Below are positions 30,507 through 60,916 of a DNA stretch of 64,000 bases, piece by piece. The stretch is taken from positions 124,001 through 188,000 of IMG/VR virus record IMGVR_UViG_3300020188_000808. One strand, given 5' to 3'. Each line of letters starts with the position of its first letter. The stretch's first letter is position 1. The notes beneath the pieces are model-generated. The model was not told the DNA's origin. It did not search any database and saw only the letters and a program-made list of their open reading frames with translations. A program made the translations under genes and the position numbers.

Positions 30507-30532
30507 TGCGTATATAATGATTGGAGAACATA

Positions 30533-38013: not shown

Positions 38014-38699
38014 ACAAACTAATTTGGAAACATATTGACTATAATAACGACAGTCTTAATAGTATAGCAAGAAATATTGCAGAGTATCATACTGCTCATG
38101 CACTAAAAGTTAAGTACTCTACAATTAAAGGAGTACCGCTAGGAACTATTTTCTTAGATGACACACATACAGTTGAAAATATCAGTGTGTTAAATAGTAT
38201 TTTAAATTATAATGTATATTTTAAAAAGAATACCGAAGTACCGTTAAAAACAATAATTGATCTTGATTGTGTTGTTGCGTTAGCAAGTGGAGACACTCCA
38301 AGTCAGTTACCAGCCAAACATACATATGTTATTGACATTAGTCCAATGGCACTAGAAAAAACAAAAGAAAAATATAATATAGATGTAGATAAGAGTTACA
38401 AATACGACCAAGTTGATTTATTTGATATACCAGCTGTAAAAAAGTTTTTAACAAAATGCCAAGGTAACGTAGGATTATTTTGTTTAAGTAATGTGTTTTT
38501 ATACTTTCCTAATTGCGTAATGTTTGATGCAAAGGCAAGACTTAAAAAACAAAATGAATTAATTAGTTTATTAGCACAAGATAAAATCAAATGGTATGTT
38601 GATATGGTAACAGTCAACGGAACACATATTCAAACACTAGCAAGTGAATTAGTAGACATGCCGTTAGACGATAAATTTAAGGTATTGCCATGGATCTAG
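38010..38699 (+). CDS. Hypothetical protein, methyltransferase-like fold
   Basis: 'ALASG..P...YVIDISPMAL...VDLFD...CLSNVF' pattern, similar to the C-terminal half of 48083. Confidence 0.4.
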   Translation: MNKLIWKHIDYNNDSLNSIARNIAEYHTAHALKVKYSTIKGVPLGTIFLDDTHTVENISVLNSILNYNVYFKKNTEVPLKTIIDLDCVVALASGDTPSQLPAKHTYVIDISPMALEKTKEKYNIDVDKSYKYDQVDLFDIPAVKKFLTKCQGNVGLFCLSNVFLYFPNCVMFDAKARLKKQNELISLLAQDKIKWYVDMVTVNGTHIQTLASELVDMPLDDKFKVLPWI

Positions 38700-39334
38700 T
38701 AGAAAAATTTAATTGGATTAGACACAACAGTGGCCTTGCTACACTTCTGTTAGATATTCCAAAGCCTACAAATGATATTAGAGATGAAATATTAAAAAGT
38801 GTTGATATTGCTGTTCCTCACAGGGATACTGACGGCAAAGGTTGGCGCAGTTTAACACTTCATGGACATAGTTCTGTAATGACTGATAGTGATGATGCTT
38901 ACAAAGAAAAAGGATTTACATTAGGTACCAAAGAATGGACTGATGTAGCAAAGCACTTTCCGTTAACCAAACAATGGATTATTAAAAATATACCTTTTGA
39001 AAAGTACGGAAGAATTAGAATAATGATAGTTGACCCAGGCGGGTATGTTAGTCCACACAAAGACTTTTTACATGGACAATTACTAGGCGGAATTAATATT
39101 GCTATTACACACCCCAAAGAAGTAGTGTTTGATATTGAGAATTATGGCAATGTAGAATGGCAAGAAGGTGAATCAAGACTGATTGATTTAGGAAGTGTGC
39201 ACCAAATTACAAACAACAGTAGTGAATCTAGGATACATATTATTGTACATAGTGAACCAATTGATAAGTGGAATAAAAAAATTATGCAACTAGTCTGCAA
39301 CAGTTACGACAAGGTATATAATGGAACAAAATAA
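38690..39334 (+). CDS. Aspartyl/asparaginyl beta-hydroxylase-like 2OG-Fe(II) oxygenase
   Basis: PGGYVSPHKD (HxD), distal H in VHQITN, RIHIIVH. Confidence 0.85.
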   Translation: MDLVEKFNWIRHNSGLATLLLDIPKPTNDIRDEILKSVDIAVPHRDTDGKGWRSLTLHGHSSVMTDSDDAYKEKGFTLGTKEWTDVAKHFPLTKQWIIKNIPFEKYGRIRIMIVDPGGYVSPHKDFLHGQLLGGINIAITHPKEVVFDIENYGNVEWQEGESRLIDLGSVHQITNNSSESRIHIIVHSEPIDKWNKKIMQLVCNSYDKVYNGTK

Positions 39335-39977
39335 TATTGAAAGAGCATTGCTATGGAATAGTCTATGTAATTTAGGCGACATGGTAAAATTAAAGCTAAA
39401 AGTTAACGGGCATGAGCTTGTACAGCAATTAGAGCAGTTTGAAGATAACTGGTGTCCTTACAACCAAAAAAAAGATGCTCACAACAATCGATGGGGATTA
39501 CCTGTAACAAGTCATACAGGTGATGTAATGGACAACTATCATTTGAATAGCTTTGGCCATATGCAACGATATCACGATGTTGAGATGAAAGAAGAAAACT
39601 TTACAACACCAACAGAAGTGTATAACAAAATTCCACAACTTGCTAGTCTTGTAGATGCGTTTGCACCTGACATTGGCCGAGTGCATTTACTTAGAGTAGA
39701 TGAAGGTGGGTTCTTTCCGCCGCACAGAGACTTTCCAGGAGTAGGACCAGAGTACTTTAGATTGTTATGTACATTTGGCAAAGCACAACCAGAAAACTAT
39801 GCACATATACTTGACAAGCAATTAATTTATCCTGATCCAGAGTATGTACATTTTATTAACTTTCAAAAAGAACATAGTGTGTTTAGTTACACTAACGGAT
39901 TATATTCTTTAATACTTACAGTTAAACTAAATCAACGCACACACGATTTAATTATTAAGAATAGCATGAGCGAATGA
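39321..39977 (+). CDS. 2OG-Fe(II) oxygenase (Asp/Asn beta-hydroxylase-like)
   Basis: GGFFPPHRD (HxD), distal EHSV. Confidence 0.75.
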   Translation: MEQNNIERALLWNSLCNLGDMVKLKLKVNGHELVQQLEQFEDNWCPYNQKKDAHNNRWGLPVTSHTGDVMDNYHLNSFGHMQRYHDVEMKEENFTTPTEVYNKIPQLASLVDAFAPDIGRVHLLRVDEGGFFPPHRDFPGVGPEYFRLLCTFGKAQPENYAHILDKQLIYPDPEYVHFINFQKEHSVFSYTNGLYSLILTVKLNQRTHDLIIKNSMSE

Positions 39978-40909
39978 AGCTAGATTATCAAGATAAAACA
40001 AAAGAAGATTGGTTCTTAGTTAGTTGGACATTAAGTAATAAATGTAATTACAAATGTTCTTACTGCCCGGATATATTACACAACGGAACTACAGGACAGC
40101 CCAAATGGGAAACTGTTAAAAACTTTGTCGAAAATTTTAAAGTACCTTCTAAAGAAATTTGTTACAGACTTAGTGGCGGAGAACCTACTTATTGGAAACA
40201 CTTTATTGATCTTGCAAAACTTGTTAAGGAACAAGGACACACATTTAGTTTTGTTACAAACGGTAGCCAATCAGTTGAATATTTTCAAAAGATAGATCCA
40301 TATACTGATGGTATGCTTATGAGTTATCATCCAGAGTATTCTTCTTCACAACATTTTGTAGATATTGCAAACGCAACATCGTGTGAAATTATTGTTAATT
40401 TAATGTTACCTCCTGGAAAAGAATCATTTGAAGAACAGTATAAAATAGCACAATACTTGTTTGATAGAACAGATAGGATGTCAATATATCCTAAAGTTAT
40501 TTTAGATAAAACAGACGGTGAACATATTACTAATGCAGTAGCACCTTATAGTAGTGAACAAAAAGAAATCATCGGTGCTTGGCCGTTTGCAAGAGAAGTT
40601 AATGATGAGAAGTTACACCGTGGAGATCTTAAACTTGATAACAATCTTATTACAGCAAATGATTTAATTATGTCTGGTATGAATAATTTTGCTGGTTGGA
40701 AATGTTGGGCAGGCGTTGACGGAATAAACATTGACATGTGGGGCAACATGTATAGAGCAGATTGTCAGTTTGGTGGACCAATAGGAAATATGGAAAGATA
40801 TAAACTACCAACTGAGCCTATTACATGCGGAAAAACTGTGTGCGGATGTTTGAGTGATATATACATACGTAAGGACCGCGGAGATAGACAAAGCAGAATT
40901 GAAGCATGA
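39974..40909 (+). CDS. Radical SAM protein with C-terminal Cys-rich domain (paralog of 33272)
   Basis: VSW.L...CNYKCSYC, LSGGEPT, FAGWKCWAG...C...CGKTVCGC. Confidence 0.9.
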   Translation: MKLDYQDKTKEDWFLVSWTLSNKCNYKCSYCPDILHNGTTGQPKWETVKNFVENFKVPSKEICYRLSGGEPTYWKHFIDLAKLVKEQGHTFSFVTNGSQSVEYFQKIDPYTDGMLMSYHPEYSSSQHFVDIANATSCEIIVNLMLPPGKESFEEQYKIAQYLFDRTDRMSIYPKVILDKTDGEHITNAVAPYSSEQKEIIGAWPFAREVNDEKLHRGDLKLDNNLITANDLIMSGMNNFAGWKCWAGVDGINIDMWGNMYRADCQFGGPIGNMERYKLPTEPITCGKTVCGCLSDIYIRKDRGDRQSRIEA

Positions 40910-41454
40910 AAATAATTATAACAGGCAATCCTAATTATGAAGGTCTTTGCAAAGGCCTATATGAAGCGTACAATGGTAACCAATTAGAATTTATTGGTAG
41001 ACACAATGGTTGGGATATGCAAGACTTAGATGCTGTTGCAGATTATATAAAAGACTATGACGTATTTGTAAACAGTTTGTTAATACCAGATAACGGTCAA
41101 GAAAAATTGTTGCATAAAGTTTACAAAACTTTCAAAGGGTCACATATAATTAACATTTCTAGTACAACAAGTTATTGGGGTGACGGTTATAGTCCAAAAG
41201 GATATCTTGAAAGTAAAACTGCACTAGATGAAGCAAGTAAAACATATTCACAATATTGTGCGTTTGGTGATAGCAAAATTCGTGTAAGCAATATTGCGTT
41301 TGGACAACTTGATTCTAAAAAAGTAAATGACAACAGTGATCGTAAGAAGATTAGTTTGCTTGATGCAGGTAAACTTATTAAGTGGTTAATTGATAGCCCA
41401 CGTAATACAAATATTCATTACCTTGCAGTTGATCCTATTCAAACAACTCTTTAA
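40906..41454 (+). CDS. Short-chain dehydrogenase/reductase (SDR)-like protein
   Basis: IIITG, DVFVN, IINISS, YLESK (YxxxK). Confidence 0.75.
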   Translation: MKIIITGNPNYEGLCKGLYEAYNGNQLEFIGRHNGWDMQDLDAVADYIKDYDVFVNSLLIPDNGQEKLLHKVYKTFKGSHIINISSTTSYWGDGYSPKGYLESKTALDEASKTYSQYCAFGDSKIRVSNIAFGQLDSKKVNDNSDRKKISLLDAGKLIKWLIDSPRNTNIHYLAVDPIQTTL

Positions 41455-42556
41455 GCTCTGGACAGTAGTTTAATACGTTTTCATTTCTAAGTTTATCTAA
41501 GTCTTTTGTATACTTAACAAATAACTCTAACTGTTTGCTATCGTCTTTGCTAGTATAATTTATATTAGGAAATCTAAAATCAATTTTGTCTAAAATGTTG
41601 TTAGGTAAAATCTGTGGATTTAAATATGCTGGTTGTGCAACTACATTATTAAAATAAATTGACCAGTTATCTTTTTTGTTTTCTTCAAACCACCAATACA
41701 ATTTATCCAAGTGTGAAATGTTATACGCCATAACTGTAACAGCAATAATTACTCTATCAAAGTTATAGTGTTTTAAATTTTCATTTAGTTGTGCAAATGT
41801 AAAGTTCTTACCACCTCTAATGTATTCGTATAATCCGTCAGTGCCTTCTACGCTCACAGTCCATTTAGTATGACCAAATTGTTTTGCAAGTGCGTGTACT
41901 TCTTCATCTACAATAGTACCATTAGTGGTCCAGTCAAGTGTAATATTTTGTGCAATACCTAAGTCAATAAACTTCTGTAATATTTTTTTATTTGCAGGCT
42001 CCATGTAAGGTTCGCCACCTTTAATACTTAGGTAACGTAAATTCATTAATGGAGTAGGGTCTTCAAACAGTCGCTCTATAATTTGTTCGCTTTTGTTAGT
42101 ATAACCAAATTCTGGATGGTCTACTGGACGTTGATAATCACTGTCCAAATTAGCTAGTTTAATTTCATCTTTAACCCAAGCACTAGAACTAATACCATTA
42201 CACATGCGACATTTCAAATTACAAATATTACTCATATTAAACTCCAAAAAGTAGATATCTGTGAAGTTTTTTGAGTAGTCGTAATTGGTATTTTCTAACA
42301 TTGGATTGAGTATGTCACGAAAGAATAAACGCCTGCTATGACCTACAGAACCTTCTTTTAAAGCACATTGTACACACTCGGGCGGTAACACTCCATTACG
42401 GATACTATCCTTTGTGTATGACGCTGTAATGCTGTTTAAGACGGTGTTTAACGGCGATTTAAGCACGTTACCATAACGCTCTTTGTACACTCCGTCGGGT
42501 ACAATATCACCATTAAAGCGTACCAAAATACTATGCCAAGGAGCGTAACATTTCAT
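41435..42556 (-). CDS. Radical SAM protein with degenerate N-terminal twitch-like domain
   Basis: CNLKCRMC, IKGGEP; N-terminal CYAPW..GDIVPDG (CC replaced)...CVQC. Confidence 0.9.
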   Translation of the reverse strand: MKCYAPWHSILVRFNGDIVPDGVYKERYGNVLKSPLNTVLNSITASYTKDSIRNGVLPPECVQCALKEGSVGHSRRLFFRDILNPMLENTNYDYSKNFTDIYFLEFNMSNICNLKCRMCNGISSSAWVKDEIKLANLDSDYQRPVDHPEFGYTNKSEQIIERLFEDPTPLMNLRYLSIKGGEPYMEPANKKILQKFIDLGIAQNITLDWTTNGTIVDEEVHALAKQFGHTKWTVSVEGTDGLYEYIRGGKNFTFAQLNENLKHYNFDRVIIAVTVMAYNISHLDKLYWWFEENKKDNWSIYFNNVVAQPAYLNPQILPNNILDKIDFRFPNINYTSKDDSKQLELFVKYTKDLDKLRNENVLNYCPELKELFE

Positions 42557-43661
42557 AACTTAAATCCTCCTTAACAATATAAATGGCTTCTTCGTTAGTC
42601 TTCATATGATGTCCAATAACATGTATTTGATTTTGGTATACAATAGGTCTACCAAACATTATATTGTTTACATATACGCCTCTAACTATTTCGCCTGTTT
42701 GGTCAATTTTTAAAATAGGACAACTAGGAGTACCACTAGGAAAAAAGTATGCATTACCCATGTACTCTATACCCGATCTAAATCTATACTTACCACCAAA
42801 GTTTAATTTGATATCAAACTGTGTAGTTTCTTTTGTAACTGTATTAAACACTAATCCCCAATTACTATCATTTGTATGTTCATCACCATAGGGCAATGCT
42901 ATAATGTTATTACCTACTAATACACCACAGTTATATTTTTTAGCAAAGTCTACTCCGTGTATGTCGTGATAGGTTACAGTATTTGTTTCTGTATCAAACT
43001 CTACAATAGTATTAAGTCCTTTAGTTTCACCAAATGGTAAACTATAAAGTGTATTGTCTTTAACAATAATATCTGTATATTTTCTAGTAATACTAGCATC
43101 AACATCTAGTTCATAACTTTGATATTGTTTGCCGTCAAAACTTAGTAGAGTATTATACCCAGGTTCATCACCTCTAGGCATACTCCAATACTTTCCGTTA
43201 CAATAAACAGTACCCATGTGTAGTTTTTTACCTTCAGTAGGTAGTTTATGTGCTTCAACTCCGTTGTTAATGTATAACCCGTAGTTTGTATCTTCGTATC
43301 CTAATGGAAAACTAAATGCAGTTTTATTGTCTGTTGCTACACTATAAAATTGTCCCTTACCTTTAAATGGTAGTGTATGATAGTACGGAGTTGTATTACG
43401 TAACTCTACAACAGTATTAAACTCATCGTAAATACCATAAGGAATAAACCAACTACTATTACCAACTTGTGCAATAGCATTTGTTTTACTAGTTGCCGCC
43501 GGCAGACTTAATTCAATGTAATTATTTTTGTAAAATATTTTACTATAATCTCTACATTGCTCAGTAGCAAACGGAGGACTTAACAGTTCGTTGTTATGCT
43601 CGGATAACAACATATGTTTAATAGACTGTTCCTTGTAAAAGTCTTGAAATGCCTTATACAT
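42531..43661 (-). CDS. Beta-propeller repeat protein
   Basis: Repeats of 'xxYxxPxG....xxxFDxxT' (LYSLPFG, IIALPYG, YFFPSG, FSFPLG). Confidence 0.6.
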   Translation of the reverse strand: MYKAFQDFYKEQSIKHMLLSEHNNELLSPPFATEQCRDYSKIFYKNNYIELSLPAATSKTNAIAQVGNSSWFIPYGIYDEFNTVVELRNTTPYYHTLPFKGKGQFYSVATDNKTAFSFPLGYEDTNYGLYINNGVEAHKLPTEGKKLHMGTVYCNGKYWSMPRGDEPGYNTLLSFDGKQYQSYELDVDASITRKYTDIIVKDNTLYSLPFGETKGLNTIVEFDTETNTVTYHDIHGVDFAKKYNCGVLVGNNIIALPYGDEHTNDSNWGLVFNTVTKETTQFDIKLNFGGKYRFRSGIEYMGNAYFFPSGTPSCPILKIDQTGEIVRGVYVNNIMFGRPIVYQNQIHVIGHHMKTNEEAIYIVKEDLSYEMLRSLA

Positions 43662-44880
43662 ATTTTAAATCCATAGTGTGTACTACTTTTTCTTTTGTTG
43701 TATCAAATACTAGTACAGTTTGAAATGATTCACTTTCACCGTACGGAAATGCAAAAATTACATCATTGTGTATTATACAGTTGTTATATTTTTCTATTGT
43801 AGTTGAGTCTTTAAAATATTCTCCTACATCTAGAGTATAATACGAATCGTCCTTGGTGTCAATTACTAATATTTCTGCAAGGTCTCCTTGACTTTTCCAA
43901 GTTTCTTCTGGCTCACAAACACATCCTCCTCTTGGTATATAATAAATTAGTCCTTTACTATTTTCAACACCTGTGAAGTATTTTTTACTTTCCTTTCCTA
44001 TATGCAAGTCAAGTGTATACCATGCGTCAACGTTGGTATCAATAACAAGCATATCGCTCCAATCTTCGTCATGCCCTGCAGGTGGAAAATAAATCTTTCC
44101 ATTACGTGCAACAGTATGACTATAATACATTCTACTTGTATCTGTTAATCCAGTGTGTTCACTAAACCAACGTGTTCCGTCAAACCGCAGTAATACATCA
44201 AAGTCTGGATTTTCACTATATGGTGGCGCATATAATTTACGTCCTACTTTTGCTAACGTAGTAAATTTCTTATTAGTAAATTGTTTATTAGCTAGATCCA
44301 ACCAATGGTTACGCATATCAATAAGTTCATAAGTCATAGAATTGCAATCGTAATGTATCCTGTAATGAAACATTGGATCTTCACACGCTTCGCCTCTAGG
44401 AACTCCATAAATAATTCCGTCTATCATTTGTGTAGTATGCCATTTTTTACAATCTTCAGTTGGTACATCTATGTGTACATACGTTAGTGTATGATCATTT
44501 AAGTTTAGATGTAATACCCAACTAAATGGTTCATGTTCTCCGTAAGGTAGTGCTACAATTTCATTACCGTGTATGTGTCCTTGTATATACTTGCCTTTAC
44601 CTTTATGAGACACTTCGATATATGTTATCTCATCAGTTTCGGTATCGACAACTAAAATTTTACTTTCGTTATACGGTAAGAAATAAATTAAGTTACGATA
44701 AACAATACCATTCTGCCACTTTTCTGTAGACTTATCAACATCAAGTTTAATTTTTGTAATAGCATATGTAGTCGGATCCATTTTAAGCATATAGTCAATA
44801 GATTTAGTTAATCCAAATGGTGGAATATAGATCATTCCATTACTACCTAATGTAGCATAACTAAAGGCTTGCGGGGTCAA
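43654..44880 (-). CDS. Beta-propeller repeat protein
   Basis: About 8 repeats (IYIPPFG, IYFLPYN, IVALPYG, IYGVPRG, LYAPPYS, IYFPPAG, IYYIPRG, IFAFPYG); TTG start at 44880 with GGAG RBS (track 44898). Confidence 0.65.
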   Translation of the reverse strand: MTPQAFSYATLGSNGMIYIPPFGLTKSIDYMLKMDPTTYAITKIKLDVDKSTEKWQNGIVYRNLIYFLPYNESKILVVDTETDEITYIEVSHKGKGKYIQGHIHGNEIVALPYGEHEPFSWVLHLNLNDHTLTYVHIDVPTEDCKKWHTTQMIDGIIYGVPRGEACEDPMFHYRIHYDCNSMTYELIDMRNHWLDLANKQFTNKKFTTLAKVGRKLYAPPYSENPDFDVLLRFDGTRWFSEHTGLTDTSRMYYSHTVARNGKIYFPPAGHDEDWSDMLVIDTNVDAWYTLDLHIGKESKKYFTGVENSKGLIYYIPRGGCVCEPEETWKSQGDLAEILVIDTKDDSYYTLDVGEYFKDSTTIEKYNNCIIHNDVIFAFPYGESESFQTVLVFDTTKEKVVHTMDLKYV

Positions 44881-47343: not shown

Positions 47344-47382
47344 AAGTATATTTAACAGATAGTTTAATGATATAGTAGAGTT

Positions 47383-48081: not shown

Positions 48082-48082
48082 C

Positions 48083-49552
48083 ATGAAAGACTGGAATAGC
48101 ATCACAGCTGATAGATACTACGAGAATCTCAATCTCGACAATCGTGTTGGTGTAGGAATTCTTAATATTAGTCGTGACATACCAGATGCTACAGTACAAA
48201 AGCGTTCTTTTGATATGACATATTTTTATGTTAACCGTATGTTAAAGATGAACATGTGTAGTTACGTAGGATTTCATAACCGTGTTGAAACAATTCTTGA
48301 AGAAGCACTAGTAAAAGGCAAAGAGTTTGCAATGGTAGCATGTCAAGGACTGTTATTGTTTAGAGGTCCAAACTTAGTGCAACAAAGTGTGGAATATGCA
48401 AAAAATAATCCGCAGTTTTTTGTAGTTGGACATATTATGGACAAGAAGAATCAACATTATCTTACTAAAGGTGCATACCCTGGGTTACATAGACAATACT
48501 TGTTTGTAAATTTAAGTAAATGGGTTGAATTAGGAAAGCCAGCATTTGATGAGATGGGTGTTTTTTGGGACAGAAAACCGGAGTTACAAAATTATTGTCT
48601 AAGTGACGATACTATTCACAGTACTTACACACCTAAATGGATTAAACCCATGCAAGGCACAAGTAAGTATGCTACAACTAGCGATGGTTCTAATTGGATT
48701 GATATTGCTATGCGTAAAAACATACAGATTGATAATTTAGACAACGATATGCGAGCCTGCAAAGTATTTTTGTATCCGTACATTGATTCTGAAAAATTAA
48801 GCAAAGTATGGTATGACAAACAAAGCCCTGTAGTAGACGAATTAACAAATCAAAGTCAAAGAGCGTGGATACGTAAGTTAGGATATCAAGAAGAAATTGA
48901 AAAGAATCGTGTATATGCTTTTAATACTGAAACATTAAGTAGTGAAGGTGTTCGTACAGGAGGCAAACTAATTGATCATCTGTTTAGTGCGGCCGCAGGT
49001 TTTAAACCTCTTGCTATTTTAAATGCTAACGGCTTTCATGCGGGTACAACAGTACATTATTTTGATTGGTGCGAAGCAAGTTTAAACTATAAAAAGCATT
49101 TATTAGAAACATGGGACGGGTATGATTTAGATGCTTGGTTACTTGAACATGATCTTGAATATAATTTTAGTAGTACCTATAGAGGAAACTATAAACAGTT
49201 TTGGGAACAAGAATTAAAAGACTTTGGTGGTAGTTTAGCATTTCAAAGACTCTGGGAAAGATATAAAAATTTAAAACATGAATTTCATGTAGTAGATCTT
49301 GTATATGATAATACTAAATTATTTGATGTTATTAATAGTGTGCATGGTACTAAGGTATTATGGACTACAAACATATGGTCAAGCGAAATGCTTCATTGGA
49401 ATCTAGGTCCAGAAGAGTTAGAACAACAATGGGCAAAGTTTGAAGCTCAAATACCAGACGATCTTGTGTTGTATGGACACGACTATGTTGCAGTTGATAT
49501 GAATTCACGAGTGCGTAACGGTGTTAGACTAACACATCAGAGGTACGCCTAA
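48083..49552 (+). CDS. Two-domain hypothetical protein (possible GT-like N-terminus and methyltransferase-like C-terminus)
   Basis: 489 aa; C-terminal 'SAAAGFKP...HYFDW.EASL...VDLV...WTTNIW' parallels 38010. Confidence 0.4.
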   Translation: MKDWNSITADRYYENLNLDNRVGVGILNISRDIPDATVQKRSFDMTYFYVNRMLKMNMCSYVGFHNRVETILEEALVKGKEFAMVACQGLLLFRGPNLVQQSVEYAKNNPQFFVVGHIMDKKNQHYLTKGAYPGLHRQYLFVNLSKWVELGKPAFDEMGVFWDRKPELQNYCLSDDTIHSTYTPKWIKPMQGTSKYATTSDGSNWIDIAMRKNIQIDNLDNDMRACKVFLYPYIDSEKLSKVWYDKQSPVVDELTNQSQRAWIRKLGYQEEIEKNRVYAFNTETLSSEGVRTGGKLIDHLFSAAAGFKPLAILNANGFHAGTTVHYFDWCEASLNYKKHLLETWDGYDLDAWLLEHDLEYNFSSTYRGNYKQFWEQELKDFGGSLAFQRLWERYKNLKHEFHVVDLVYDNTKLFDVINSVHGTKVLWTTNIWSSEMLHWNLGPEELEQQWAKFEAQIPDDLVLYGHDYVAVDMNSRVRNGVRLTHQRYA

Positions 49553-50199
49553 TGGAGATGAAGCGTTACATAGAGGAACATGACCAAGCAGACTTAGGCT
49601 GGGCAGTTAAAAAGTTATGCAGAGTTAATCCGGATGAAATACAAAGTTGGTACGCTGACTTAGAAAAAGATTACAGCGATTGGAAATTTGTTATAGGTGA
49701 ACAACAACATGTATGGCAGTTTCCTATTAGTGATCCTGAAGCAAAGACAGGGCATCGTCTAATGGACGATACAGCATACTATACTCTTTGTTGGAATAGT
49801 GATGAACCGGGACCTAAACCATTTGAACAAGGGTGTGCAAAGCCAGAGTATAGAGATAATGATAATGACGAGCTTAATCCAAGGGAATGTTTTAAAGGAT
49901 ATGGATTAGATTTAGTAAACAATTTGCCTATGCGTAGTAAGAAATGGTTAGTAACTATTCATACACCAGGTACTAAATTAATTACACACCAAGACGCTCC
50001 AGATAAAATACGTGTACACATACCTATACATACCAATGCAGACAGTAATTGGATAATAGGCGGAAAAGAATACCATATGGAAGTAGGCTGGGCTTATCTT
50101 GTTAACACAACTATTCCGCATAGTGTAGAAAACAAAGGTACAACGGATAGGATACATTTATACGGAAAGGTTTGGACAGATGATTGCCGTAAGTTATAG
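49552..50199 (+). CDS. Asp/Asn beta-hydroxylase-like 2OG-Fe(II) oxygenase
   Basis: PGTKLITHQD, RVHIPI, PHSVEN, DRIHL. Confidence 0.85.
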   Translation: MEMKRYIEEHDQADLGWAVKKLCRVNPDEIQSWYADLEKDYSDWKFVIGEQQHVWQFPISDPEAKTGHRLMDDTAYYTLCWNSDEPGPKPFEQGCAKPEYRDNDNDELNPRECFKGYGLDLVNNLPMRSKKWLVTIHTPGTKLITHQDAPDKIRVHIPIHTNADSNWIIGGKEYHMEVGWAYLVNTTIPHSVENKGTTDRIHLYGKVWTDDCRKL

Positions 50200-50608
50200 T
50201 AAGAAAGACTTTGTATCTAAAATGCAAAGTGAAAATATCACAGATGTAACAGTTGAAGATACTAATGATTATTATATTTGCATTGATTCAACAGGTGGTC
50301 CAAACAGTGAGCCTTATTTTAAACAATTTCATCCCAATGTATTAAATTTATGTTTTGATGATGTTGCTGAAGATCAAACAAATTGGGGAGAAGATATACA
50401 ATCATATTACAAAGCAGTTGCACCAACCCTAACACAAATTCAACACATTTCAAATTTCCTTAAAGATGCTTGTGGAACAATTCATGTTCATTGTATGAAA
50501 GGCGAATCACGTAGCAAAGCAGTTGCAGATTATGTAAATAATACTAGAATTAAACATAATGGAAAGTATGCATATACAATTATAAGGAATACACTAGATG
50601 AGCTTTGA
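50180..50608 (+). CDS. Cys-dependent (PTP/dual-specificity-like) phosphatase
   Basis: HCMKGESRS = HCxxGxxRS P-loop; 'FDD' general-acid loop. Confidence 0.75.
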   Translation: MIAVSYSKKDFVSKMQSENITDVTVEDTNDYYICIDSTGGPNSEPYFKQFHPNVLNLCFDDVAEDQTNWGEDIQSYYKAVAPTLTQIQHISNFLKDACGTIHVHCMKGESRSKAVADYVNNTRIKHNGKYAYTIIRNTLDEL

Positions 50609-51149
50609 TGTAAAAGAATTACCTATAGGGATCGAATATAGTGACTTTAGAAGTTACTACATAGGATTACAAACAAACTTTGAACATTTAAAATTTACTA
50701 ATGTAGCTGATACTGTTAATAGTGAAAAACATAAAACTGATGGTGTATACGGTTGGGGTATACAAAGTAATTTAGACGACTTAACAATACCTTGTCCACC
50801 TTGGAATGTACACAAGGAAGGTAGCGATGATTATAGAGATACTGAATTAGTATACGGTGTAATTAATAGACTTAAAGTAAAATTTCCTCAAGCAAGACAG
50901 TTTAGTATTAGCGGCCATCCACCCGGAACTGAAATAGCACAGCACACCGACACTGATAGATATCTTAAAATACATATTCCTATACTAAGTAACCCTGATG
51001 CATGTTTTGTATTTGGTGATAAAAAATATTCGTTAGTTATTGGAAAAGCATATCTAATAAATACTAGACGCCCACACGGTACTATTAATAACGGAGAAAC
51101 AGATAGAGTACATTTATTTTTTAAAGTACCTGCTGAACATTACATATGA
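50598..51149 (+). CDS. Asp/Asn beta-hydroxylase-like 2OG-Fe(II) oxygenase
   Basis: PGTEIAQHTD, KIHIPI, PHGTIN, DRVHL. Confidence 0.85.
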   Translation: MSFDVKELPIGIEYSDFRSYYIGLQTNFEHLKFTNVADTVNSEKHKTDGVYGWGIQSNLDDLTIPCPPWNVHKEGSDDYRDTELVYGVINRLKVKFPQARQFSISGHPPGTEIAQHTDTDRYLKIHIPILSNPDACFVFGDKKYSLVIGKAYLINTRRPHGTINNGETDRVHLFFKVPAEHYI

Positions 51150-51874
51150 GATTATTAACTGCTAAAGATATAACAGATGTTGATGCATTATTTAATAGTC
51201 TCGAATGGGATATAATTGAATTAGACTTTAGCATTAATAAAGATGATTTAGAATTCTATTATACACAATTAAAAACACGATTACAAAATTTATGCTTTAG
51301 TTTTAATTCTAAAGAATATCTACGTCCTGAAATATATGATAGATTTCAAAAAGAAAATGCAGTTGGAAATTATCAAGGAAACGTACAAGGTTGGAGTGTT
51401 AGTTGGCCAATAGAGCGAGATATTCCATGTCCAAGTAAATCACAAGCTAACATTGATATGTATCCTGAATTACAAAATTTAGATGAAGAAAAATTCTATT
51501 ATGATTGTGTACCAATGCAAGTTTATAAATTTGGTATCTTAAACAAAATGTTAGAAACACTATCTTTGCAATCATTAAGACAGATGTTAATAGCATTACA
51601 CCCTAGTGGACTTAAAGTTAATACACATACTGACGGAAAAACTAGAAAACTACATGTTCCATTTTATACAAATAAAGATGCTGTTTTTACTTTTGGCGAA
51701 AACAGAGAACGAACATATCACATGGAATTGGGCAAAGGATATATAATTAATACCCTAGTTCCACATGGTACAGAAAATAACGGAAGTACAGAGCGAGTAC
51801 ACTTATTGTCCAGAGTTGATGACGATTTTATGCAATCGCTTTTATTAATAAACTGCAATATAGCAGATAAATAA
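51146..51874 (+). CDS. Asp/Asn beta-hydroxylase-like 2OG-Fe(II) oxygenase
   Basis: VNTHTD, KLHVPF, PHGTEN, ERVHL. Confidence 0.85.
   Translation: MRLLTAKDITDVDALFNSLEWDIIELDFSINKDDLEFYYTQLKTRLQNLCFSFNSKEYLRPEIYDRFQKENAVGNYQGNVQGWSVSWPIERDIPCPSKSQANIDMYPELQNLDEEKFYYDCVPMQVYKFGILNKMLETLSLQSLRQMLIALHPSGLKVNTHTDGKTRKLHVPFYTNKDAVFTFGENRERTYHMELGKGYIINTLVPHGTENNGSTERVHLLSRVDDDFMQSLLLINCNIADK
51867..51873 (+). promoter_or_regulatory. T4-late-like promoter ATAAATA
   Basis: GATAAATA followed by AGGAG RBS and ATG at 51893; same layout as at 19868. Confidence 0.55.
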
Positions 51875-51892
51875 CAGTAACAGGAGATAATA

Positions 51893-53140
51893 ATGAGCAA
51901 CACATATTTTACACAGGTATTAGACGAACCATACCACTTAGGAAATGGTGAATTTTTGTCAGTAATCACTAACGGAAAAGCACGTCACGAAGGCGAAGAA
52001 ACAAGAGATTTTAACAAAGATGCAGGTGCAAGAGCAGGATTGCTTAGAGTAAATGCAGATAGTACTACATTTGTAGACTTTTTTGATAAAAGTGATAACG
52101 GTGACAGATACCGAGGTATTGCAGTTGTAGGTAATACAGCATATGTAATGCGTACACAAAAAGACAAAGTAGACAGCATTATTAGAGTAGCGGCTGTAAA
52201 CTTAGATACTAATGAAGTTACAATGATTGAAGAAAAAGGTGTTACAGTACACGGCTCAGAAACTCCTAAAACATTCTGTGGACACTTTAACTTTGGTCGC
52301 CCAATTACAGTTGGTACTAAAATTGTTTATCCACCAATTATGAGTGGAATGATTATTGTGTTTGATACTGTTGCTAATACATTTACTGTACACGAAACAG
52401 AAGAAAAGTTTGCTTCTATTCATAGTGTGTACGTAGAAGATTTAAATGAAGTTGTATTTTTTCCATATGGTAAAACAACTAACAAGTTGTTAACATTAGA
52501 CATGGAAACAAATACAATTACTGCACATGAAGCTCCAACTAACGGTGCATTTTATCATGTTAATACAAACGGAACTAAAGCAGTTGGTGCTCCATTAATT
52601 ATGGACGGTACTACAGAATTTAACTTCTGGGTATATGACGGTGATACAGTTCAATCAGTTGCTTATGATTCATCTAGCACAGATGACATGGGTGGACAAA
52701 TGGGTTTCAAATACGGAACTATGAACGGTAACACATTATTAACACATACTTGTTGGGAAGGCTGTAAAGAGTTTGTATCATTAAACTTAGATACACTTGC
52801 TATTGATAGCTTTGCAACTAATGAGTCACTAGGTAGTAAACCAGTTATTAATGCTGGAGACGTTTACTTGTTTCCATCAATACAAAATCCAAGCATGGTA
52901 AATCCAACAACTAAAGTTTTTAAAGTTGAAGGAACTGCAATTAACGAAGTTATGGACTTAGGTACTGCAAATATTACTTCAGGATCAATTAATGATACTG
53001 ATAGTGTTACAATGTTGGCACCTTACAAGTTTGATTTTAGTGATGCAGGGTTAGGTAGTGATATGGCTATTGTAGATCTTAATTCTAAAACATCAAAACT
53101 TATTCCAGTTAATTTAAGCCTAGAAACTTATTCTAGTTAA
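51893..53140 (+). CDS. Beta-propeller repeat protein, possibly virion-associated
   Basis: Repeats IVYPPIM..IIVFDT, VVFFPYG..LLTLD, AVGAPL, VYLFPS; T/N/G-rich like the structural genes; own promoter and RBS. Confidence 0.55.
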   Translation: MSNTYFTQVLDEPYHLGNGEFLSVITNGKARHEGEETRDFNKDAGARAGLLRVNADSTTFVDFFDKSDNGDRYRGIAVVGNTAYVMRTQKDKVDSIIRVAAVNLDTNEVTMIEEKGVTVHGSETPKTFCGHFNFGRPITVGTKIVYPPIMSGMIIVFDTVANTFTVHETEEKFASIHSVYVEDLNEVVFFPYGKTTNKLLTLDMETNTITAHEAPTNGAFYHVNTNGTKAVGAPLIMDGTTEFNFWVYDGDTVQSVAYDSSSTDDMGGQMGFKYGTMNGNTLLTHTCWEGCKEFVSLNLDTLAIDSFATNESLGSKPVINAGDVYLFPSIQNPSMVNPTTKVFKVEGTAINEVMDLGTANITSGSINDTDSVTMLAPYKFDFSDAGLGSDMAIVDLNSKTSKLIPVNLSLETYSS

Positions 53141-53145
53141 TTGTT

Positions 53146-53862
53146 ATGGAGCGTTTTAACGATACGCCCTGCCAAGACGCCACAGGAAAAATGTTCGCTG
53201 ACTATCACGAATATGTAGACTACGATAAAAAGAATAATCCAGATAGATGCCATTTTAAAAACGCTCAAGGCAGAGAAACCTTTGCTCCTAGTTTTAATCG
53301 TGTAAGTGAAATATATCCATACCATGATCTAGGATTTCAAATGCATAAATGGTTTGAGTTTGATCTAGAGAAAGCCCGTGATTGGTATAAACAATTTTTA
53401 GAAAAATATTCAGATACTGAATTTCTCTACCAAGGAGAAACTACAGAACCTAACAGTTGGGGTTGTGTATATGGACAAGGGTGTGGGTTATATAGTATTA
53501 AAGAAGAACAGTTATTTGGTTATTTGTTAGATATACACAATGCACTAATTGATATGGGATTAGATAAAGATGCATTTGAATGGGTAGTAGTAAAACATAC
53601 ACCAGGAACACGCTTAGGTATGCATCAAGATGAGCCACAATGGCTTACAGTACATTTACCTTTATACACTAATGATAAAACCAATTGGACAATAGGCGGA
53701 ACTCCGTTCTTAATGCCAACTGACGGGTGTTATATTATTAATAGTACACAACCTCATGATGTTGTAAATTATGGCGACACAGATAGAATACATATCTATT
53801 TCAGTATAAAAACTTCACAGGTTGAAAAAGTCTGGGAAAAGCCAAATATAAAAGGAAGTTAG
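53146..53862 (+). CDS. Asp/Asn beta-hydroxylase-like 2OG-Fe(II) oxygenase
   Basis: PGTRLGMHQD, TVHLPL, PHDVVN, DRIHI. Confidence 0.85.
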   Translation: MERFNDTPCQDATGKMFADYHEYVDYDKKNNPDRCHFKNAQGRETFAPSFNRVSEIYPYHDLGFQMHKWFEFDLEKARDWYKQFLEKYSDTEFLYQGETTEPNSWGCVYGQGCGLYSIKEEQLFGYLLDIHNALIDMGLDKDAFEWVVVKHTPGTRLGMHQDEPQWLTVHLPLYTNDKTNWTIGGTPFLMPTDGCYIINSTQPHDVVNYGDTDRIHIYFSIKTSQVEKVWEKPNIKGS

Positions 53863-53870
53863 ACACTAGT

Positions 53871-56450: not shown

Positions 56451-56494
56451 ATACTTACTTATTTGAAAACTATTTTGGAATTATTGGATGTGAA

Positions 56495-60813: not shown

Positions 60814-60841
60814 GTGCCTATTCCTTATTGTTTATACTTAC

Positions 60842-60870
60842 AGTATACACTATTTAATTGAGTTTGTCAA
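60842..60870 (-). promoter_or_regulatory. Sigma70-like early promoter TTGACA-N17-TATACT
   Basis: -35 at 60870-60865 and -10 at 60847-60842 with 17-nt spacer, upstream of 60813. Confidence 0.75.
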
Positions 60871-60872
60871 CC

Positions 60873-60911: not shown

Positions 60912-60916
60912 ATCAG

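What the first reader, a model, noticed from the sequence alone, without database searches (positions are those of the whole stretch)
38690..53862. Seven Asp/Asn-beta-hydroxylase-like 2OG-Fe(II) oxygenases, five in one operon
38690, 39321, 47383, 49552, 50598, 51146 and 53146 all keep HxD...H, and six keep the terminal R-x-H. Their N-terminal (substrate-recognition) halves diverge, which suggests substrate diversification rather than gene dosage. Established: this family hydroxylates protein Asp/Asn (AspH) and lipid A acyl chains (LpxO). Inference: they may hydroxylate the very Asn/Asp-rich fibre and baseplate proteins, creating acceptor sites for the GTs, or hydroxylate sugar/acyl substituents. 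O2-dependent oxygenases are interleaved with O2-sensitive radical SAM enzymes.
Basis: partly seen in the sequence, partly recalled or inferred. Interest (0 to 1): 0.65.

Follow-up and report, generated by a model that had tools for sequence, protein, structure and literature searches.

The report
Seven phage beta-hydroxylase paralogues, tailoring island
A large marine or salt-marsh phage carries seven real iron/2-oxoglutarate hydroxylase genes inside a big, conserved island of tailoring enzymes beside its tail-fibre genes. They resemble small-molecule hydroxylases more than the protein Asp/Asn hydroxylase AspH, so they probably decorate a sugar- or metabolite-type molecule, although their substrate is still unknown.

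Summary
Six ORFs pass Pfam's PF05118 cut-off. The seventh (39321) joins the family by profile-profile comparison and by profile hits to proline hydroxylases. HxD...H is invariant in all seven and in their orthologues; the terminal RxH is present in six.

They fall into three subfamilies:
- A: 38690 and 47383.
- B: 49552, 50598, 51146 and 53146.
- C: 39321.

The genome is a T4-like jumbo myovirus of 268 kb, about 75% complete. All 80 related IMG/VR loci carry the 47383 orthologue used to find them. Full-length loci usually hold 5-7 family members with much the same neighbours.

The closest solved relative is Cpz10, a nucleoside-antibiotic hydroxylase, followed by free-proline hydroxylases. AspH is clearly further away, and the LpxO and OlsC models score far below their cut-offs.

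Gene fusions link subfamily B to a Cys-phosphatase and subfamily A to a GT-A-like protein. Homologous modules lie in bacterial chromosomes beside glycan-type genes, with no fibre homologues detected.

Best reading (0.45): tailoring hydroxylases acting on phosphorylated sugar- or metabolite-type intermediates of a surface decoration. Direct hydroxylation of fibre proteins (0.25) is not excluded. This is a new variant of the dioxygenase and radical-SAM arrays already noted in cyanophages and pelagimyophages.

The parts
38690..39334 (+). Subfamily A hydroxylase (214 aa)
   Evidence: PF05118 E 1.8e-11, profile positions 7-153. It is 34% identical to 47383. HxD, distal H and RIH are present. It occurs in only 13 of the 80 related loci.
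39321..39977 (+). Subfamily C hydroxylase-like protein (218 aa) without the terminal RxH
   Evidence: No Pfam hit. hhalign against subfamily A gives 94.9%, E 4e-8. The profile hits 4p7w (1.6e-5) and 1e5r (9e-4). H135, D137 and H185 are invariant in 21 orthologues. Orthologues occur in 62 loci.
47383..48081 (+). Subfamily A hydroxylase (232 aa), first gene of the + strand run
   Evidence: PF05118 E 1.9e-12. 277 close relatives in metagenomes. It was the query for the scan, so all 80 loci carry it. It lies next to a 48083-like gene in a Halobacteriovoraceae chromosome and is fused to one in Pseudobdellovibrionaceae.
48083..49552 (+). Two-domain partner protein (489 aa) with a GT-A-like N-terminal domain
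   Evidence: AlphaFold model with pLDDT 80.6. Residues 14-263 match about 45 GT-A glycosyltransferases at Z 8-10. Residues 273-489 match 6ulo_B at Z 9.3. There are no Pfam, PHROG, NCBIfam or PDB sequence hits. No DxD motif was recognised by eye.
49552..50199 (+). Subfamily B hydroxylase (215 aa)
   Evidence: PF05118 E 2.2e-12. Model pLDDT 94.5. VIA-align gives Cpz10 Z 17-18, AspH Z 14 and the proline hydroxylases Z 13.6-13.7. It is fused to the phosphatase in 9 related loci.
50180..50608 (+). Cys-based (dual-specificity type) phosphatase (142 aa)
   Evidence: The motif C105-x2-G-x-S-R-S and an upstream FDD are invariant in 13 orthologues. Pfam DSPc matches 6 orthologues, best E 5e-5. phrog_5614 E 5.5e-10. 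It is fused to subfamily B oxygenases.
50598..51149 (+). Subfamily B hydroxylase (183 aa)
   Evidence: PF05118 E 3.5e-11. This is the commonest type among the 150 best library representatives: 85 of 150.
51146..51874 (+). Subfamily B hydroxylase (242 aa)
   Evidence: PF05118 E 1.1e-6.
51893..53140 (+). PxG-repeat, propeller-like protein (415 aa)
   Evidence: Distant member of the 42531/43654 family: HMM E 2.7e-5, hhalign 75%. No family hits.
53146..53862 (+). Subfamily B hydroxylase (238 aa), the rarest copy
   Evidence: PF05118 E 1.1e-8. Orthologues are present in only 3 related loci.
53871..55302 (+). Thioredoxin (53871-54194) and a flavin-dependent Trp-halogenase-family enzyme (54142-55302)
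   Evidence: PF00085 E 1e-13 and PF04820 E 2.6e-72.
44861..45328 (-). Small APH/RIO/choline-kinase-like kinase (155 aa)
   Evidence: Its orthologues hit Pfam APH, RIO1 and Choline_kinase, best E 7e-6. A kinase-type HxDxxxxN...D motif is visible in the sequence. Present in 79 loci.
42531..44898 (-). Two paralogous PxG-repeat, propeller-like proteins (376 and 414 aa)
   Evidence: They are paralogues by BLAST. There are no family or PDB hits. The Atlas search gives a lead to Reg_prop propellers at score 0.92.
25813..28363 (+). Two N_Twi radical SAM paralogues
   Evidence: NF033640 at 329 and 387 bits. Pfam Radical_SAM and SPASM.
33272..37435 (+). Radical SAM 33272; methyltransferase-like 34539; radical SAM/SPASM 35143; N_Twi radical SAM 36110
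   Evidence: Pfam. NF033640 at 418 bits for 36110. Methyltransf_25 matches in the mixed orthologue set. The module is shared with Bdellovibrionota chromosomes at 31-53% identity.
39974..41454 (+). Radical SAM 39974 and short-chain dehydrogenase-like 40906
   Evidence: Pfam Radical_SAM E 5.5e-10. adh_short and adh_short_C2 match orthologues of 40906.
41435..42556 (-). N_Twi-type radical SAM paralogue
   Evidence: Pfam Radical_SAM E 7.6e-10. Paralogue of 36110.
45303..47448 (-). N_Twi-type radical SAM 45303 and radical SAM/SPASM 46366, divergent from 47383
   Evidence: Pfam. Paralogy.
24932..25816 (+). Member of the 24932/32620 family with a conserved VDGDN (DxD-like) motif. The paralogue lies at 32620-33294.
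   Evidence: Alignment with 16 bacterial homologues. Only 1 of 18 members hits Glyco_tranf_2_2, at E 0.0018. Assigning it as a glycosyltransferase is an inference.
30521..31705 (+). UDP-glucose/GDP-mannose dehydrogenase
   Evidence: PF00984 E 5e-18 and PF03721 E 1.6e-17.
55782..57868 (-). Short AMP-binding-domain protein (55782-56450) and an Mtd_N tail-fibre paralogue (56495-57868) that bound the island
   Evidence: PF00501 E 2.9e-21 and PF18454 E 1.6e-11.

Best explanation
The seven ORFs are genuine Fe(II)/2-oxoglutarate hydroxylases of the PF05118 beta-hydroxylase family, in three subfamilies. They belong to a conserved island of tailoring enzymes about 35 kb long. The island holds nine radical SAM enzymes, methyltransferase-like and SDR-like proteins, a UDP-sugar dehydrogenase, a small kinase, a Cys-phosphatase, a GT-A-like protein, a halogenase and a thioredoxin. 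It lies among the tail-fibre genes of a T4-like jumbo myovirus.

Most likely each paralogue hydroxylates a different unactivated C-H position of low-molecular-weight intermediates. These would be sugar-, nucleoside- or amino-acid-derived, and partly phosphorylated. They would be assembled into a decorated glycoconjugate or metabolite.

Proposed partner roles:
- Subfamily A acts together with the GT-A-like protein 48083.
- Subfamily B acts together with the phosphatase 50180, and probably on substrates phosphorylated by the kinase 44861.
- Subfamily C lacks the usual 2OG C5-binding Arg and may bind its co-substrate differently.

Shown here: family membership, fold, conserved metal ligands, the three subfamilies, synteny across relatives, the gene fusions, and homologous modules in bacterial chromosomes.

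Inferred: catalytic activity, substrate class, the order of steps, and whether the product ends up on the host envelope or on the virion.
For: Membership and fold.

The closest solved relatives act on small molecules:
- Subfamily B profile: Cpz10 5.6e-10, L-proline cis-4-hydroxylase 2.7e-8, and AspH not listed at E up to 1.
- Subfamily A profile: Cpz10 5.7e-5, 4p7w 1.4e-4, AspH 0.04-0.19.
- Subfamily C profile: 4p7w 1.6e-5, 1e5r 9e-4.
- The 49552 model gives Cpz10 Z 17-18 (rmsd 2.3-2.9 A, 159-167 residues aligned) against AspH Z 14.
- Cpz10 hydroxylates a nucleoside intermediate in a pathway where a kinase phosphorylates an intermediate (PMC9814697).

Fusions:
- Phosphatase fused to a 49552-type oxygenase in 9 loci.
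- Phosphatase fused to a 50598-type oxygenase in P0143.
- A 48083-like region fused to a subfamily A oxygenase in a bacterial protein of 761 aa. The same two genes are adjacent in a Halobacteriovoraceae chromosome.

Glycan-type or small-molecule-type neighbours:
- Window: UDP-glucose dehydrogenase, GT-A fold, SDR-like and methyltransferase-like proteins.
- Bacterial L162: GT2, YdjC, carbamoyltransferase and an AsnB-like protein.
- L168: DegT aminotransferase.
- Cultured Pelagibacter phage Mosig: ArnB-like aminotransferase, carbamoyltransferase and acetyltransferase.
- tblastn with the window's fibre (56495), propeller-like (42531, 43654, 51893) and 37435 proteins found nothing in the 80 bacterial loci.

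The island is conserved. All 80 related loci carry the 47383 orthologue used to find them. Full-length loci usually hold 5-7 oxygenase copies.
Against: - No enzyme was assayed and no substrate was identified.
- Sequence identity to Cpz10 and the proline hydroxylases is only 12-19%, so substrate class cannot be transferred from them.
- The island sits between fibre genes. A remote relative also lies next to an Mtd_N fibre protein, which would equally suit protein targets.
- Radical SAM/SPASM enzymes, dual-specificity phosphatases and protein-kinase-like folds often act on peptides or proteins.
- No canonical nucleotide-sugar dehydratase or aminotransferase and no Pfam glycosyltransferase was found in the window itself.
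- No DxD motif was recognised in 48083, so it may not be a transferase.
- The bacterial neighbourhoods differ from one another. Some hold FA_desaturase, which points to lipids.
Confidence: 0.45

Rival explanations
1. Direct post-translational hydroxylation of the phage's own virion proteins (fibres, tail-collar or Mtd-type proteins, or the propeller-like proteins). Phosphorylation or glycosylation might follow, on the logic of collagen lysyl hydroxylase/glycosyltransferase LH3.
For: - The island lies between fibre genes: tail collar at 16023 and Mtd_N at 56495.
- A remote relative has three tandem PF05118 genes and a sulfotransferase beside an 826-aa Mtd_N protein.
- Mosig has its PF05118 genes next to tail fibres.
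- PMC2938197 proposed tail-collar proteins as substrates of bacterial beta-hydroxylase operons.
- A hydroxylase is adjacent or fused to a GT-A-like two-domain protein, and LH3 and mimivirus R699 appear among the fold matches of that protein.
- Phage-specific propeller-like proteins and a fibre-like 192-aa ORF (37435) lie inside the island.
Against: - AspH is the more distant relative, and no TPR or other docking domain was found.
- The fibres are not enriched in Asn or Asp.
- Subfamily A with its 48083 partner, subfamily C, and the radical SAM module occur in bacterial chromosomes. The window's fibre and propeller-like proteins found no match there.
- The LH3 oxygenase domain belongs to a different 2OG family.
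Confidence: 0.25
2. Remodelling of host envelope lipids in the manner of LpxO or OlsC: hydroxylation of acyl chains of lipid A, ornithine lipids or related glycolipids, to alter the cell surface during infection.
For: - PF05118 contains LpxO and OlsC, and these give the only NCBIfam hits.
- FA_desaturase genes sit beside PF05118 genes in L165, L166, L170 and Mosig.
- The pelagimyophage literature reads the glycosyltransferases of this fibre-linked region as modifiers of the host O-chain (PMC7029224).
Against: - The LpxO and OlsC models score 15-18 bits against cut-offs of 450-500.
- No FA_desaturase or acyltransferase was found among the window ORFs that were scanned.
- The fusions are to a phosphatase and to a GT-A-like protein, not to lipid enzymes.
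Confidence: 0.12
3. Maturation of a ribosomal peptide (RiPP-like) or another peptide natural product. The radical SAM/SPASM enzymes, hydroxylases, halogenase and AMP-binding enzyme would all modify a peptide.
For: - Radical SAM/SPASM and twitch-domain enzymes.
- The best solved relative of the N_Twi radical SAM family is the peptide maturase SkfB, at E 1e-3.
- A halogenase and an AMP-binding protein are present.
- Beta-hydroxylase-family enzymes are known in peptide antibiotic clusters (PMC2938197).
Against: - The genes overlap or are separated by about 50 nt or less, so there is no room for a precursor gene and none is evident.
- No RiPP recognition element or leader peptidase was found.
- All matches to peptide-maturase models are far below their cut-offs.
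- The sugar-type neighbours argue otherwise.
Confidence: 0.1
4. Hypermodification of phage DNA or nucleotides. The kinase, phosphatase, radical SAM enzymes and oxygenases would act on nucleotides or on DNA bases.
For: - Cpz10 and its pathway act on uridine derivatives (PMC9814697).
- The radical SAM ORFs have weak matches to the MoaA, viperin and QueE models.
- A kinase and a phosphatase are present.
Against: - The island lies among fibre genes, not DNA-metabolism genes.
- No TET/JBP-type or other known base-modifying family was detected in the ORFs scanned.
- The homologous bacterial modules sit beside glycan and lipid genes.
Confidence: 0.05

Closest known systems
Cpz10 (PDB 7v4f/7v4m), the non-haem 2OG beta-hydroxylase of caprazamycin biosynthesis
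   Same: - Best solved relative of subfamilies A and B by sequence profile (5.7e-5 and 5.6e-10).
- Best solved relative of the 49552 model by structure (Z 17-18, rmsd 2.3-2.9 A, nearly the whole chain).
- It is a small single-domain enzyme of similar length.
- Its pathway also uses a kinase on an intermediate (PMC9814697).
   Different: - Only 15-17% identity.
- Cpz10 belongs to an actinobacterial nucleoside-antibiotic cluster, and none of its partner enzymes were found here.
- The phage proteins carry an extra N-terminal region.
- Fusion to a phosphatase or to a GT-A-like protein is not described for Cpz10.
L-proline cis-4-hydroxylase (4p7w) and proline 3-hydroxylase (1e5r), which hydroxylate free amino acids
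   Same: - Best solved relatives of subfamily C (1.6e-5 and 9e-4).
- 4p7w is the second-best solved relative of A and B.
- Same fold at Z 13.6-13.7.
- HxD...H metal triad.
   Different: - 12-19% identity.
- Subfamily C lacks the Arg that follows the distal His in the other six copies.
Human AspH (protein Asp/Asn beta-hydroxylase) and bacterial LpxO and OlsC
   Same: - Same Pfam family, PF05118.
- Same fold: AspH Z 14.
- RxH after the distal His in six copies.
   Different: - AspH is hit only at E 0.04-0.19 by subfamily A and not at all by B.
- No TPR domain.
- From my own knowledge, AspH has an atypical two-His metal site, whereas these proteins keep HxD.
- The LpxO and OlsC equivalog models score 15-18 bits against cut-offs of 450-500.
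Host-recognition clusters of marine T4-like phages: pelagimyophages (Mosig EXVC030M, PMC7029224) and cyanophage dioxygenase arrays (Syn9, PMC2938197; PMC7824862)
   Same: - Fibre-linked hypervariable regions that carry Asp/Asn-beta-hydroxylase-type genes, radical SAM cassettes, methyltransferases and a halogenase or carbamoyltransferase.
- Mosig has three PF05118 genes, 3-4 MoaA-like radical SAM genes and an FA desaturase next to its tail fibres.
- No function has been established in any of these systems.
   Different: - Here the host genome is a jumbo phage whose capsid protein is closest to the Phosso, PA5oct and GAP32 group.
- There are seven PF05118 copies in three subfamilies and nine radical SAM genes.
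- A phosphatase, a kinase, a GT-A-like protein and propeller-like partners are present.
- The Syn9 array consists mainly of other 2OG families.
LH3/PLOD and mimivirus collagen hydroxylase-glycosyltransferases
   Same: A hydroxylase coupled to, or in some relatives fused with, a two-domain GT-A-like protein. LH3 and mimivirus R699 appear among the fold matches of 48083.
   Different: - From my own knowledge, the LH3 oxygenase domain belongs to another 2OG family.
- The 48083 matches are generic for the GT-A fold (Z 8-10), and no DxD motif was recognised.
- No collagen-like substrate was found.

Membership tests
Pfam PF05118 (Asp/Arg/Pro beta-hydroxylase family of 2OG oxygenases) | Score above Pfam's gathering cut-off (22.6 bits) | tested here: met
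   Six of the seven score 29-48 bits. 39321 falls below the cut-off, but it is linked by hhalign (94.9%) and by profile hits to 4p7w and 1e5r.
Pfam PF05118 (Asp/Arg/Pro beta-hydroxylase family of 2OG oxygenases) | Double-stranded beta-helix fold with an HxD/E...H iron site | tested here: met
   The 49552 model (pLDDT 94.5) matches family members at Z 13-18. HxD...H is invariant in all seven and in 21, 24 and 40 orthologues. Only one paralogue was modelled. Metal binding itself was not tested.
Pfam PF05118 (Asp/Arg/Pro beta-hydroxylase family of 2OG oxygenases) | Basic residue about 10 positions after the distal His that binds the 2OG C5 carboxylate (the RxH motif) | tested here: inconclusive
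   Present in six copies: invariant in subfamily A and at least 90% conserved in subfamily B. Absent in 39321 and in all 21 of its orthologues. The role of this Arg comes from my own knowledge of AspH.
AspH-type protein Asp/Asn beta-hydroxylase | TPR substrate-docking domain together with closest similarity to AspH | tested here: not met
   No TPR or other extra domain in Pfam. AspH ranks below Cpz10 and the proline hydroxylases by profile and below Cpz10 by structure.
LpxO (lipid A hydroxylase, NF033391) and OlsC (NF052565) | Score above NCBIfam's equivalog cut-off (500 and 450 bits) | tested here: not met
   Best scores are 16-18 bits.
Cpz10-like or free-amino-acid hydroxylases (small-molecule beta-hydroxylases) | Small-molecule substrate; closest sequence and structure neighbours | tested here: inconclusive
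   They are the nearest solved relatives, but at only 12-19% identity. Substrate specificity cannot be tested with these tools.
LH3-like hydroxylase/glycosyltransferase systems | PLOD-type oxygenase domain joined to catalytic GT-A domains with a DxD motif, acting on collagen-like Lys | tested here: not met
   The oxygenases are PF05118. 48083 has the GT-A fold, but no DxD motif was recognised and no collagen-like substrate was found. Only the coupling of a hydroxylase with a GT-A-like protein is shared.
RiPP biosynthetic cluster | A precursor peptide gene next to the maturases | tested here: not met
   No free intergenic space and no evident small precursor ORF in 21389-56450. A precursor encoded elsewhere is not excluded.

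The most novel reading that the evidence does not exclude
The phage encodes a self-contained system that decorates its own receptor-binding proteins. PF05118 hydroxylases would create hydroxyl groups on fibre or propeller-like proteins. The co-encoded kinase/phosphatase pair and the GT-A-like protein would then phosphorylate or glycosylate those groups. This would be a phage analogue of collagen LH3 chemistry, with paralogue number tracking fibre diversity.
Probability: 0.2. Interest if true: 0.8.

Novelty: new variant of a known kind. Interest (0 to 1): 0.5.

Why it matters
Large marine T4-like phages devote tens of kilobases beside their fibre genes to oxygenases and radical SAM enzymes, and nobody has assigned a product to these regions.

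This window gives a well-defined and widely conserved example. All 80 IMG/VR loci carry the 47383 orthologue used to find them, and hundreds of metagenomic relatives exist. It also offers three concrete handles for experiments:
- Three oxygenase subfamilies, each with its own partner.
- Fusions that pair subfamily B with a phosphatase and subfamily A with a GT-A-like protein.
- A homologous module in Bdellovibrionota and other bacteria.

A cultured relative of the theme exists: Pelagibacter phage Mosig. If the product is a surface decoration, it would bear on host recognition, on superinfection exclusion and on oxygen- and iron-dependent costs of infection. If the targets are virion proteins, it would be a new kind of phage protein modification.

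Tried and rejected
Searches that found nothing:
- PHROGs gave nothing for the seven oxygenases. For the partners it gave only unknown-function or weak hits.
- Megablast of 38000-54000 and tblastn of 47383 against 50,697 cultured-phage records: no match.
- Pattern scan of GTDB genomes with subfamily B: no relative. This scan only reaches sequences that share two short conserved peptides.
- Two alignments were too diverse for the scan.
- Promoter and terminator scans were no better than shuffles.
- PDB sequence profiles for 48083, the propeller-like family and the 24932/32620 family: nothing.
- hhalign of the 24932/32620 family against 48083: unrelated.
- NCBIfam on the partner proteins and relaxed Pfam on the upstream unknown ORFs: nothing usable.
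- Atlas searches returned only unnamed viral clusters, plus a lead to a 688-aa PF05118 cluster.

Tests without a verdict:
- Complex prediction of 49552 with 50180 returned no verdict, so it counts neither for nor against binding.
- Contigs from RNA libraries cover 47383-51428, but they cannot show transcription, strand or level, and DNA may be present in those libraries.

Not done:
- No phylogeny with AspH, LpxO and cyanophage enzymes was built, because no tool gave me reference sequences for them. Ranking by profile E-values, model cut-offs and structural Z scores was used instead.

Readings considered and placed lower:
- RiPP maturation (no precursor gene).
- DNA hypermodification (wrong genomic neighbourhood).
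- Gene dosage (the copies are only 15-35% identical and each is separately conserved).

Full report
**What is there.** The window is bases 124001-188000 of a 267,783-bp IMG/VR virus record that CheckV estimates to be 75% complete. The record encodes a T4-type major capsid protein (Pfam Gp23, 267 bits) and a large terminase. The capsid protein is 66-71% identical to those of the jumbo myoviruses Sinorhizobium phage Phosso, Vibrio phage 2.275.O, Pseudomonas phage PA5oct and Cronobacter phage GAP32. G+C content is about 33%.

**Checking the observation.** Six ORFs (38690, 47383, 49552, 50598, 51146, 53146) exceed Pfam's cut-off for PF05118 Asp_Arg_Hydrox, with E from 1e-6 to 2e-12. A six-frame search of the whole genome finds the same six.

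ORF 39321 has no Pfam hit, and an HMM built from the other six does not retrieve it (E 0.25). On single-sequence evidence, then, the seventh member is unproven. However, a profile of 21 orthologues of 39321 aligns to the subfamily A profile with 94.9% probability (E 4e-8). The same profile hits L-proline cis-4-hydroxylase (E 1.6e-5) and proline 3-hydroxylase (E 9e-4) in the PDB. Its H-R-D and distal His are invariant. I therefore accept it as a divergent member. An HMM of all seven finds no further copy in the 268 kb.

HxD...H is invariant in the seven-way alignment, and the terminal R-[IV]-H is present in six. These residues are also invariant or nearly so across 24 subfamily A and 40 subfamily B sequences. 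The proteins fall into three groups:
- A: 38690 and 47383, 34% identical to each other.
- B: 49552, 50598, 51146 and 53146.
- C: 39321.

Identity between groups is 15-19%.

**Operon claim.** Five copies lie in one co-directional run, 47383-55302, with overlaps or gaps of 18 nt or less. Co-transcription is an inference. Consensus promoter and terminator scans were uninformative. Six salt-marsh metatranscriptome libraries hold 86-99% of the stretch, and their contigs cross several genes (47719-51428). Contigs cannot prove transcription, and DNA may be present in those libraries.

**Surroundings.** The oxygenases sit in an island of roughly 35 kb, about 21.4-56.5 kb in window coordinates. It is flanked by a 4937-aa ORF, a tail-collar protein and fibre paralogues upstream, and by an Mtd_N fibre paralogue downstream. 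The island contains:
- Nine radical SAM genes. Five belong to NCBIfam's N-terminal-twitch family NF033640, three of them scored at 329-418 bits.
- A UDP-glucose/GDP-mannose dehydrogenase.
- Two methyltransferase-like proteins and an SDR-like protein.
- A small APH/RIO-like kinase, 44861.
- A Cys-phosphatase, 50180, with an invariant C-x5-R motif.
- A thioredoxin and a Trp-halogenase-family enzyme.
- Three PxG-repeat, propeller-like proteins.
- The 489-aa protein 48083. Its model (pLDDT 80.6) has an N-terminal GT-A fold, with Z 8-10 to about 45 glycosyltransferases.
- A further family, 24932/32620, with a conserved VDGDN motif. Its support as a glycosyltransferase is weak.

**Conservation.** ORF 47383 has 277 relatives at 70% identity or more in metagenomes, on contigs of up to 365 kb. 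Eighty IMG/VR loci were fetched with it as the query. Gene-order maps show the same core in most of them: the radical SAM genes, 39321, the propeller-like pair, the kinase, 47383, 48083, subfamily B copies, the phosphatase, the halogenase, the AMP-binding protein and the fibre. Full-length loci carry 5-7 oxygenase genes as a rule, with a range of 1-8. 38690 and 53146 are the least widespread copies. The expansion is therefore a stable property of the lineage, with turnover at its edges.

**Nearest characterised relatives.** Results by sequence profile against the PDB:

| Subfamily | Cpz10 (7v4f) | L-Pro cis-4-hydroxylase (4p7w) | Pro 3-hydroxylase (1e5r) | AspH |
|---|---|---|---|---|
| B | 5.6e-10 | 2.7e-8 | 0.16 | not listed at E up to 1 |
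| A | 5.7e-5 | 1.4e-4 | 0.63 | 0.04-0.19 |
| C | 0.074 | 1.6e-5 | 9e-4 | not listed at E up to 10 |

The 49552 model (pLDDT 94.5) superposes best on Cpz10: Z 17-18, rmsd 2.3-2.9 A, 159-167 of about 170 residues. AspH follows at Z 14 and the proline hydroxylases at Z 13.6-13.7. Foldseek placed these three groups within one order of magnitude of each other.

Cpz10 hydroxylates a glycyluridine-type intermediate of caprazamycin, in a pathway where a kinase phosphorylates an intermediate (PMC9814697). NCBIfam's LpxO and OlsC models score 15-18 bits against cut-offs of 450-500. So these proteins are members of the Pfam family, but they are not AspH, LpxO or OlsC orthologues.

**Partner evidence from fusions.**
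- In nine related phage loci, a 50180-type phosphatase and a 49552-type oxygenase form one ORF of 358-372 aa.
- A library representative (P0143) fuses the phosphatase to a 50598-type oxygenase. Another (P0121) is a tandem double oxygenase.
- In a Pseudobdellovibrionaceae chromosome, a 761-aa gene joins a 48083-like region to a subfamily A oxygenase.
- In a Halobacteriovoraceae chromosome, the two genes are adjacent in the same order as in the window.

These fusions tie subfamily B to dephosphorylation and subfamily A to the GT-A-like protein.

**Cellular counterparts.** A scan with the N_Twi radical SAM gene found 80 bacterial loci. Most are from Bdellovibrionota; others are from Bacteroidota, Legionellales and further groups. 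Many carry the same module at 31-53% identity: 24932/32620, 33272, 34539, 35143 and 36110. Some also carry 47383-like, 39321-like, 48083-like or 40906-like genes.

Their neighbours differ from locus to locus:
- One locus has GT2, YdjC, a carbamoyltransferase, an AsnB-like amidotransferase, a B12 radical SAM, a TPP enzyme and an aldehyde dehydrogenase.
- Another has eight radical SAM genes, an FA desaturase, methyltransferases and a SIS-domain protein.
- A third has two PF05118 genes and an FA desaturase.

The window's fibre, propeller-like, kinase and phosphatase proteins found no match in these loci. Subfamily B gave one weak hit. The subfamily B profile nevertheless finds 5876 cluster representatives at E up to 1e-3, and 71 at E up to 1e-30, in the large library. 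Remote relatives lie beside a DegT aminotransferase and B12 radical SAM genes. Others lie beside a TauD oxygenase. One lies as three tandem copies with a sulfotransferase, FA desaturases and an Mtd_N fibre protein.

**Cultured phages and literature.** Only Pelagibacter phage Mosig EXVC030M has detectable relatives among 50,697 phage records. Its region contains two annotated Asp_Arg_Hydrox genes, an FA desaturase, a TauD dioxygenase, 3-4 MoaA-like radical SAM genes, a carbamoyltransferase, an ArnB-like aminotransferase, methyltransferases and an acetyltransferase, directly beside the tail fibres. A third Asp_Arg_Hydrox gene lies elsewhere in that genome.

The relevant papers say the following:
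- Pelagimyophage 'host recognition clusters' have been described as holding glycosyltransferases and radical SAM cassettes. An Asp/Asn beta-hydroxylase is listed there as a core pelagimyophage protein (PMC7029224).
- Cyanophage Syn9 has ten tandem dioxygenases with a halogenase. The same paper proposed that bacterial beta-hydroxylase operons hydroxylate co-encoded tail-collar or collagen-like proteins (PMC2938197).
- A later survey read a cyanophage cluster with a halogenase, 2OG oxygenases, cupins and carbamoyltransferases as either capsule decoration or a secondary metabolite (PMC7824862).
- A T4-like environmental genome with 12 radical SAM genes has been noted (PMC5332604).

**Interpretation.** The nearest relatives act on small molecules. 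The partners are a phosphatase, a kinase, a GT-A-like protein, an SDR-like protein, methyltransferase-like proteins and a UDP-sugar dehydrogenase. The homologous bacterial and pelagiphage regions contain sugar-modifying genes, and the window's fibre proteins have no detectable homologues in the bacterial loci.

I therefore favour tailoring of sugar-, nucleoside- or amino-acid-derived, partly phosphorylated intermediates of a decorated glycoconjugate or metabolite, at confidence 0.45. Where the product ends up, host envelope or virion, is open.

Direct hydroxylation of virion proteins (0.25) keeps real support from the genomic position and from the recurrent fibre neighbours. Lipid hydroxylation (0.12), peptide maturation (0.10) and nucleic-acid modification (0.05) are less likely, for the reasons given under the rival explanations.

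**Limits.** Nothing here measures activity. Only one oxygenase and one partner were modelled. The remaining unknown proteins could not be folded (29188, 22677/23518, 24932, the propeller-like proteins). No reference phylogeny was built. The complex prediction gave no verdict.

Noticed in passing
window 570-15383 (+): A single 4937-aa ORF lies immediately upstream of a tail-collar protein (16023) and two fibre paralogues. Its nature was not analysed.
   Followed up: no
window 25813, 27170, 36110 (+); 41435, 45303 (-): Five paralogous radical SAM enzymes of the N_Twi family (three scored against NF033640, the other two placed by paralogy). Their twitch/SPASM-like Cys motif lies N-terminal to the radical SAM core. 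Their closest cellular homologues (43-47% identity) are in Bdellovibrionota MAGs. This could reflect gene exchange or hint at the host.
   Followed up: partly
L026, L028, L032, L039, L041-L043, L047, L048 at about 12110-13230; P0143; P0121: Natural fusions: phosphatase with a subfamily B oxygenase (358-372 aa, and 327 aa in P0143), and a tandem double oxygenase (404 aa, P0121).
   Followed up: yes
L095:19334-21316 (-), which is the 761-aa gene in L165; L162:10001-12183: A bacterial fusion of a 48083-like region with a subfamily A oxygenase, and an adjacent pair of the same two genes in a Halobacteriovoraceae chromosome.
   Followed up: yes
window 46366-47448 (-) and 47383-48081 (+): These divergent ORFs overlap by 66 nt at their 5' ends as listed. 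Many orthologues of 47383 align only from residue 14-19 onward, so one or both start codons are probably further in.
   Followed up: no
window 55782-56450 (-): This 222-aa protein covers only positions 168-331 of the 384-position AMP-binding profile, yet it is conserved in about 52 related loci. It is either a truncated adenylate-forming domain or one half of a split enzyme together with 55232.
   Followed up: no
whole genome G000 (window ORFs 16023, 18053, 19894, 56495 and ten more): A 14-member paralogous family of fibre-type proteins (tail collar or Mtd_N) is scattered across the 268-kb genome.
   Followed up: no
window 59545-62068 (-): A DUF2201 metallopeptidase with a VWA-like domain lies next to a MoxR-like AAA ATPase.
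   Followed up: no
window 47383-53862: Six salt-marsh metatranscriptome libraries and many salt-marsh DNA libraries hold 86-99% of this stretch. The phage is abundant in that habitat, but transcription is not proven.
   Followed up: partly
L171 (Pelagibacter phage Mosig EXVC030M, MT647606.1, 51-70 kb): A cultured pelagimyophage carries a comparable fibre-adjacent region: two Asp_Arg_Hydrox genes, an FA desaturase, a TauD oxygenase, MoaA-like radical SAM genes, a carbamoyltransferase and an ArnB-like aminotransferase. It could serve as an experimental model.
   Followed up: partly
window 37435-38013 (+): A 192-aa ORF inside the enzyme island has a fibre-like sequence character (Gly/Asn/Thr-rich, beta-strand-like repeats). 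It is present in only 12-13 related loci.
   Followed up: no
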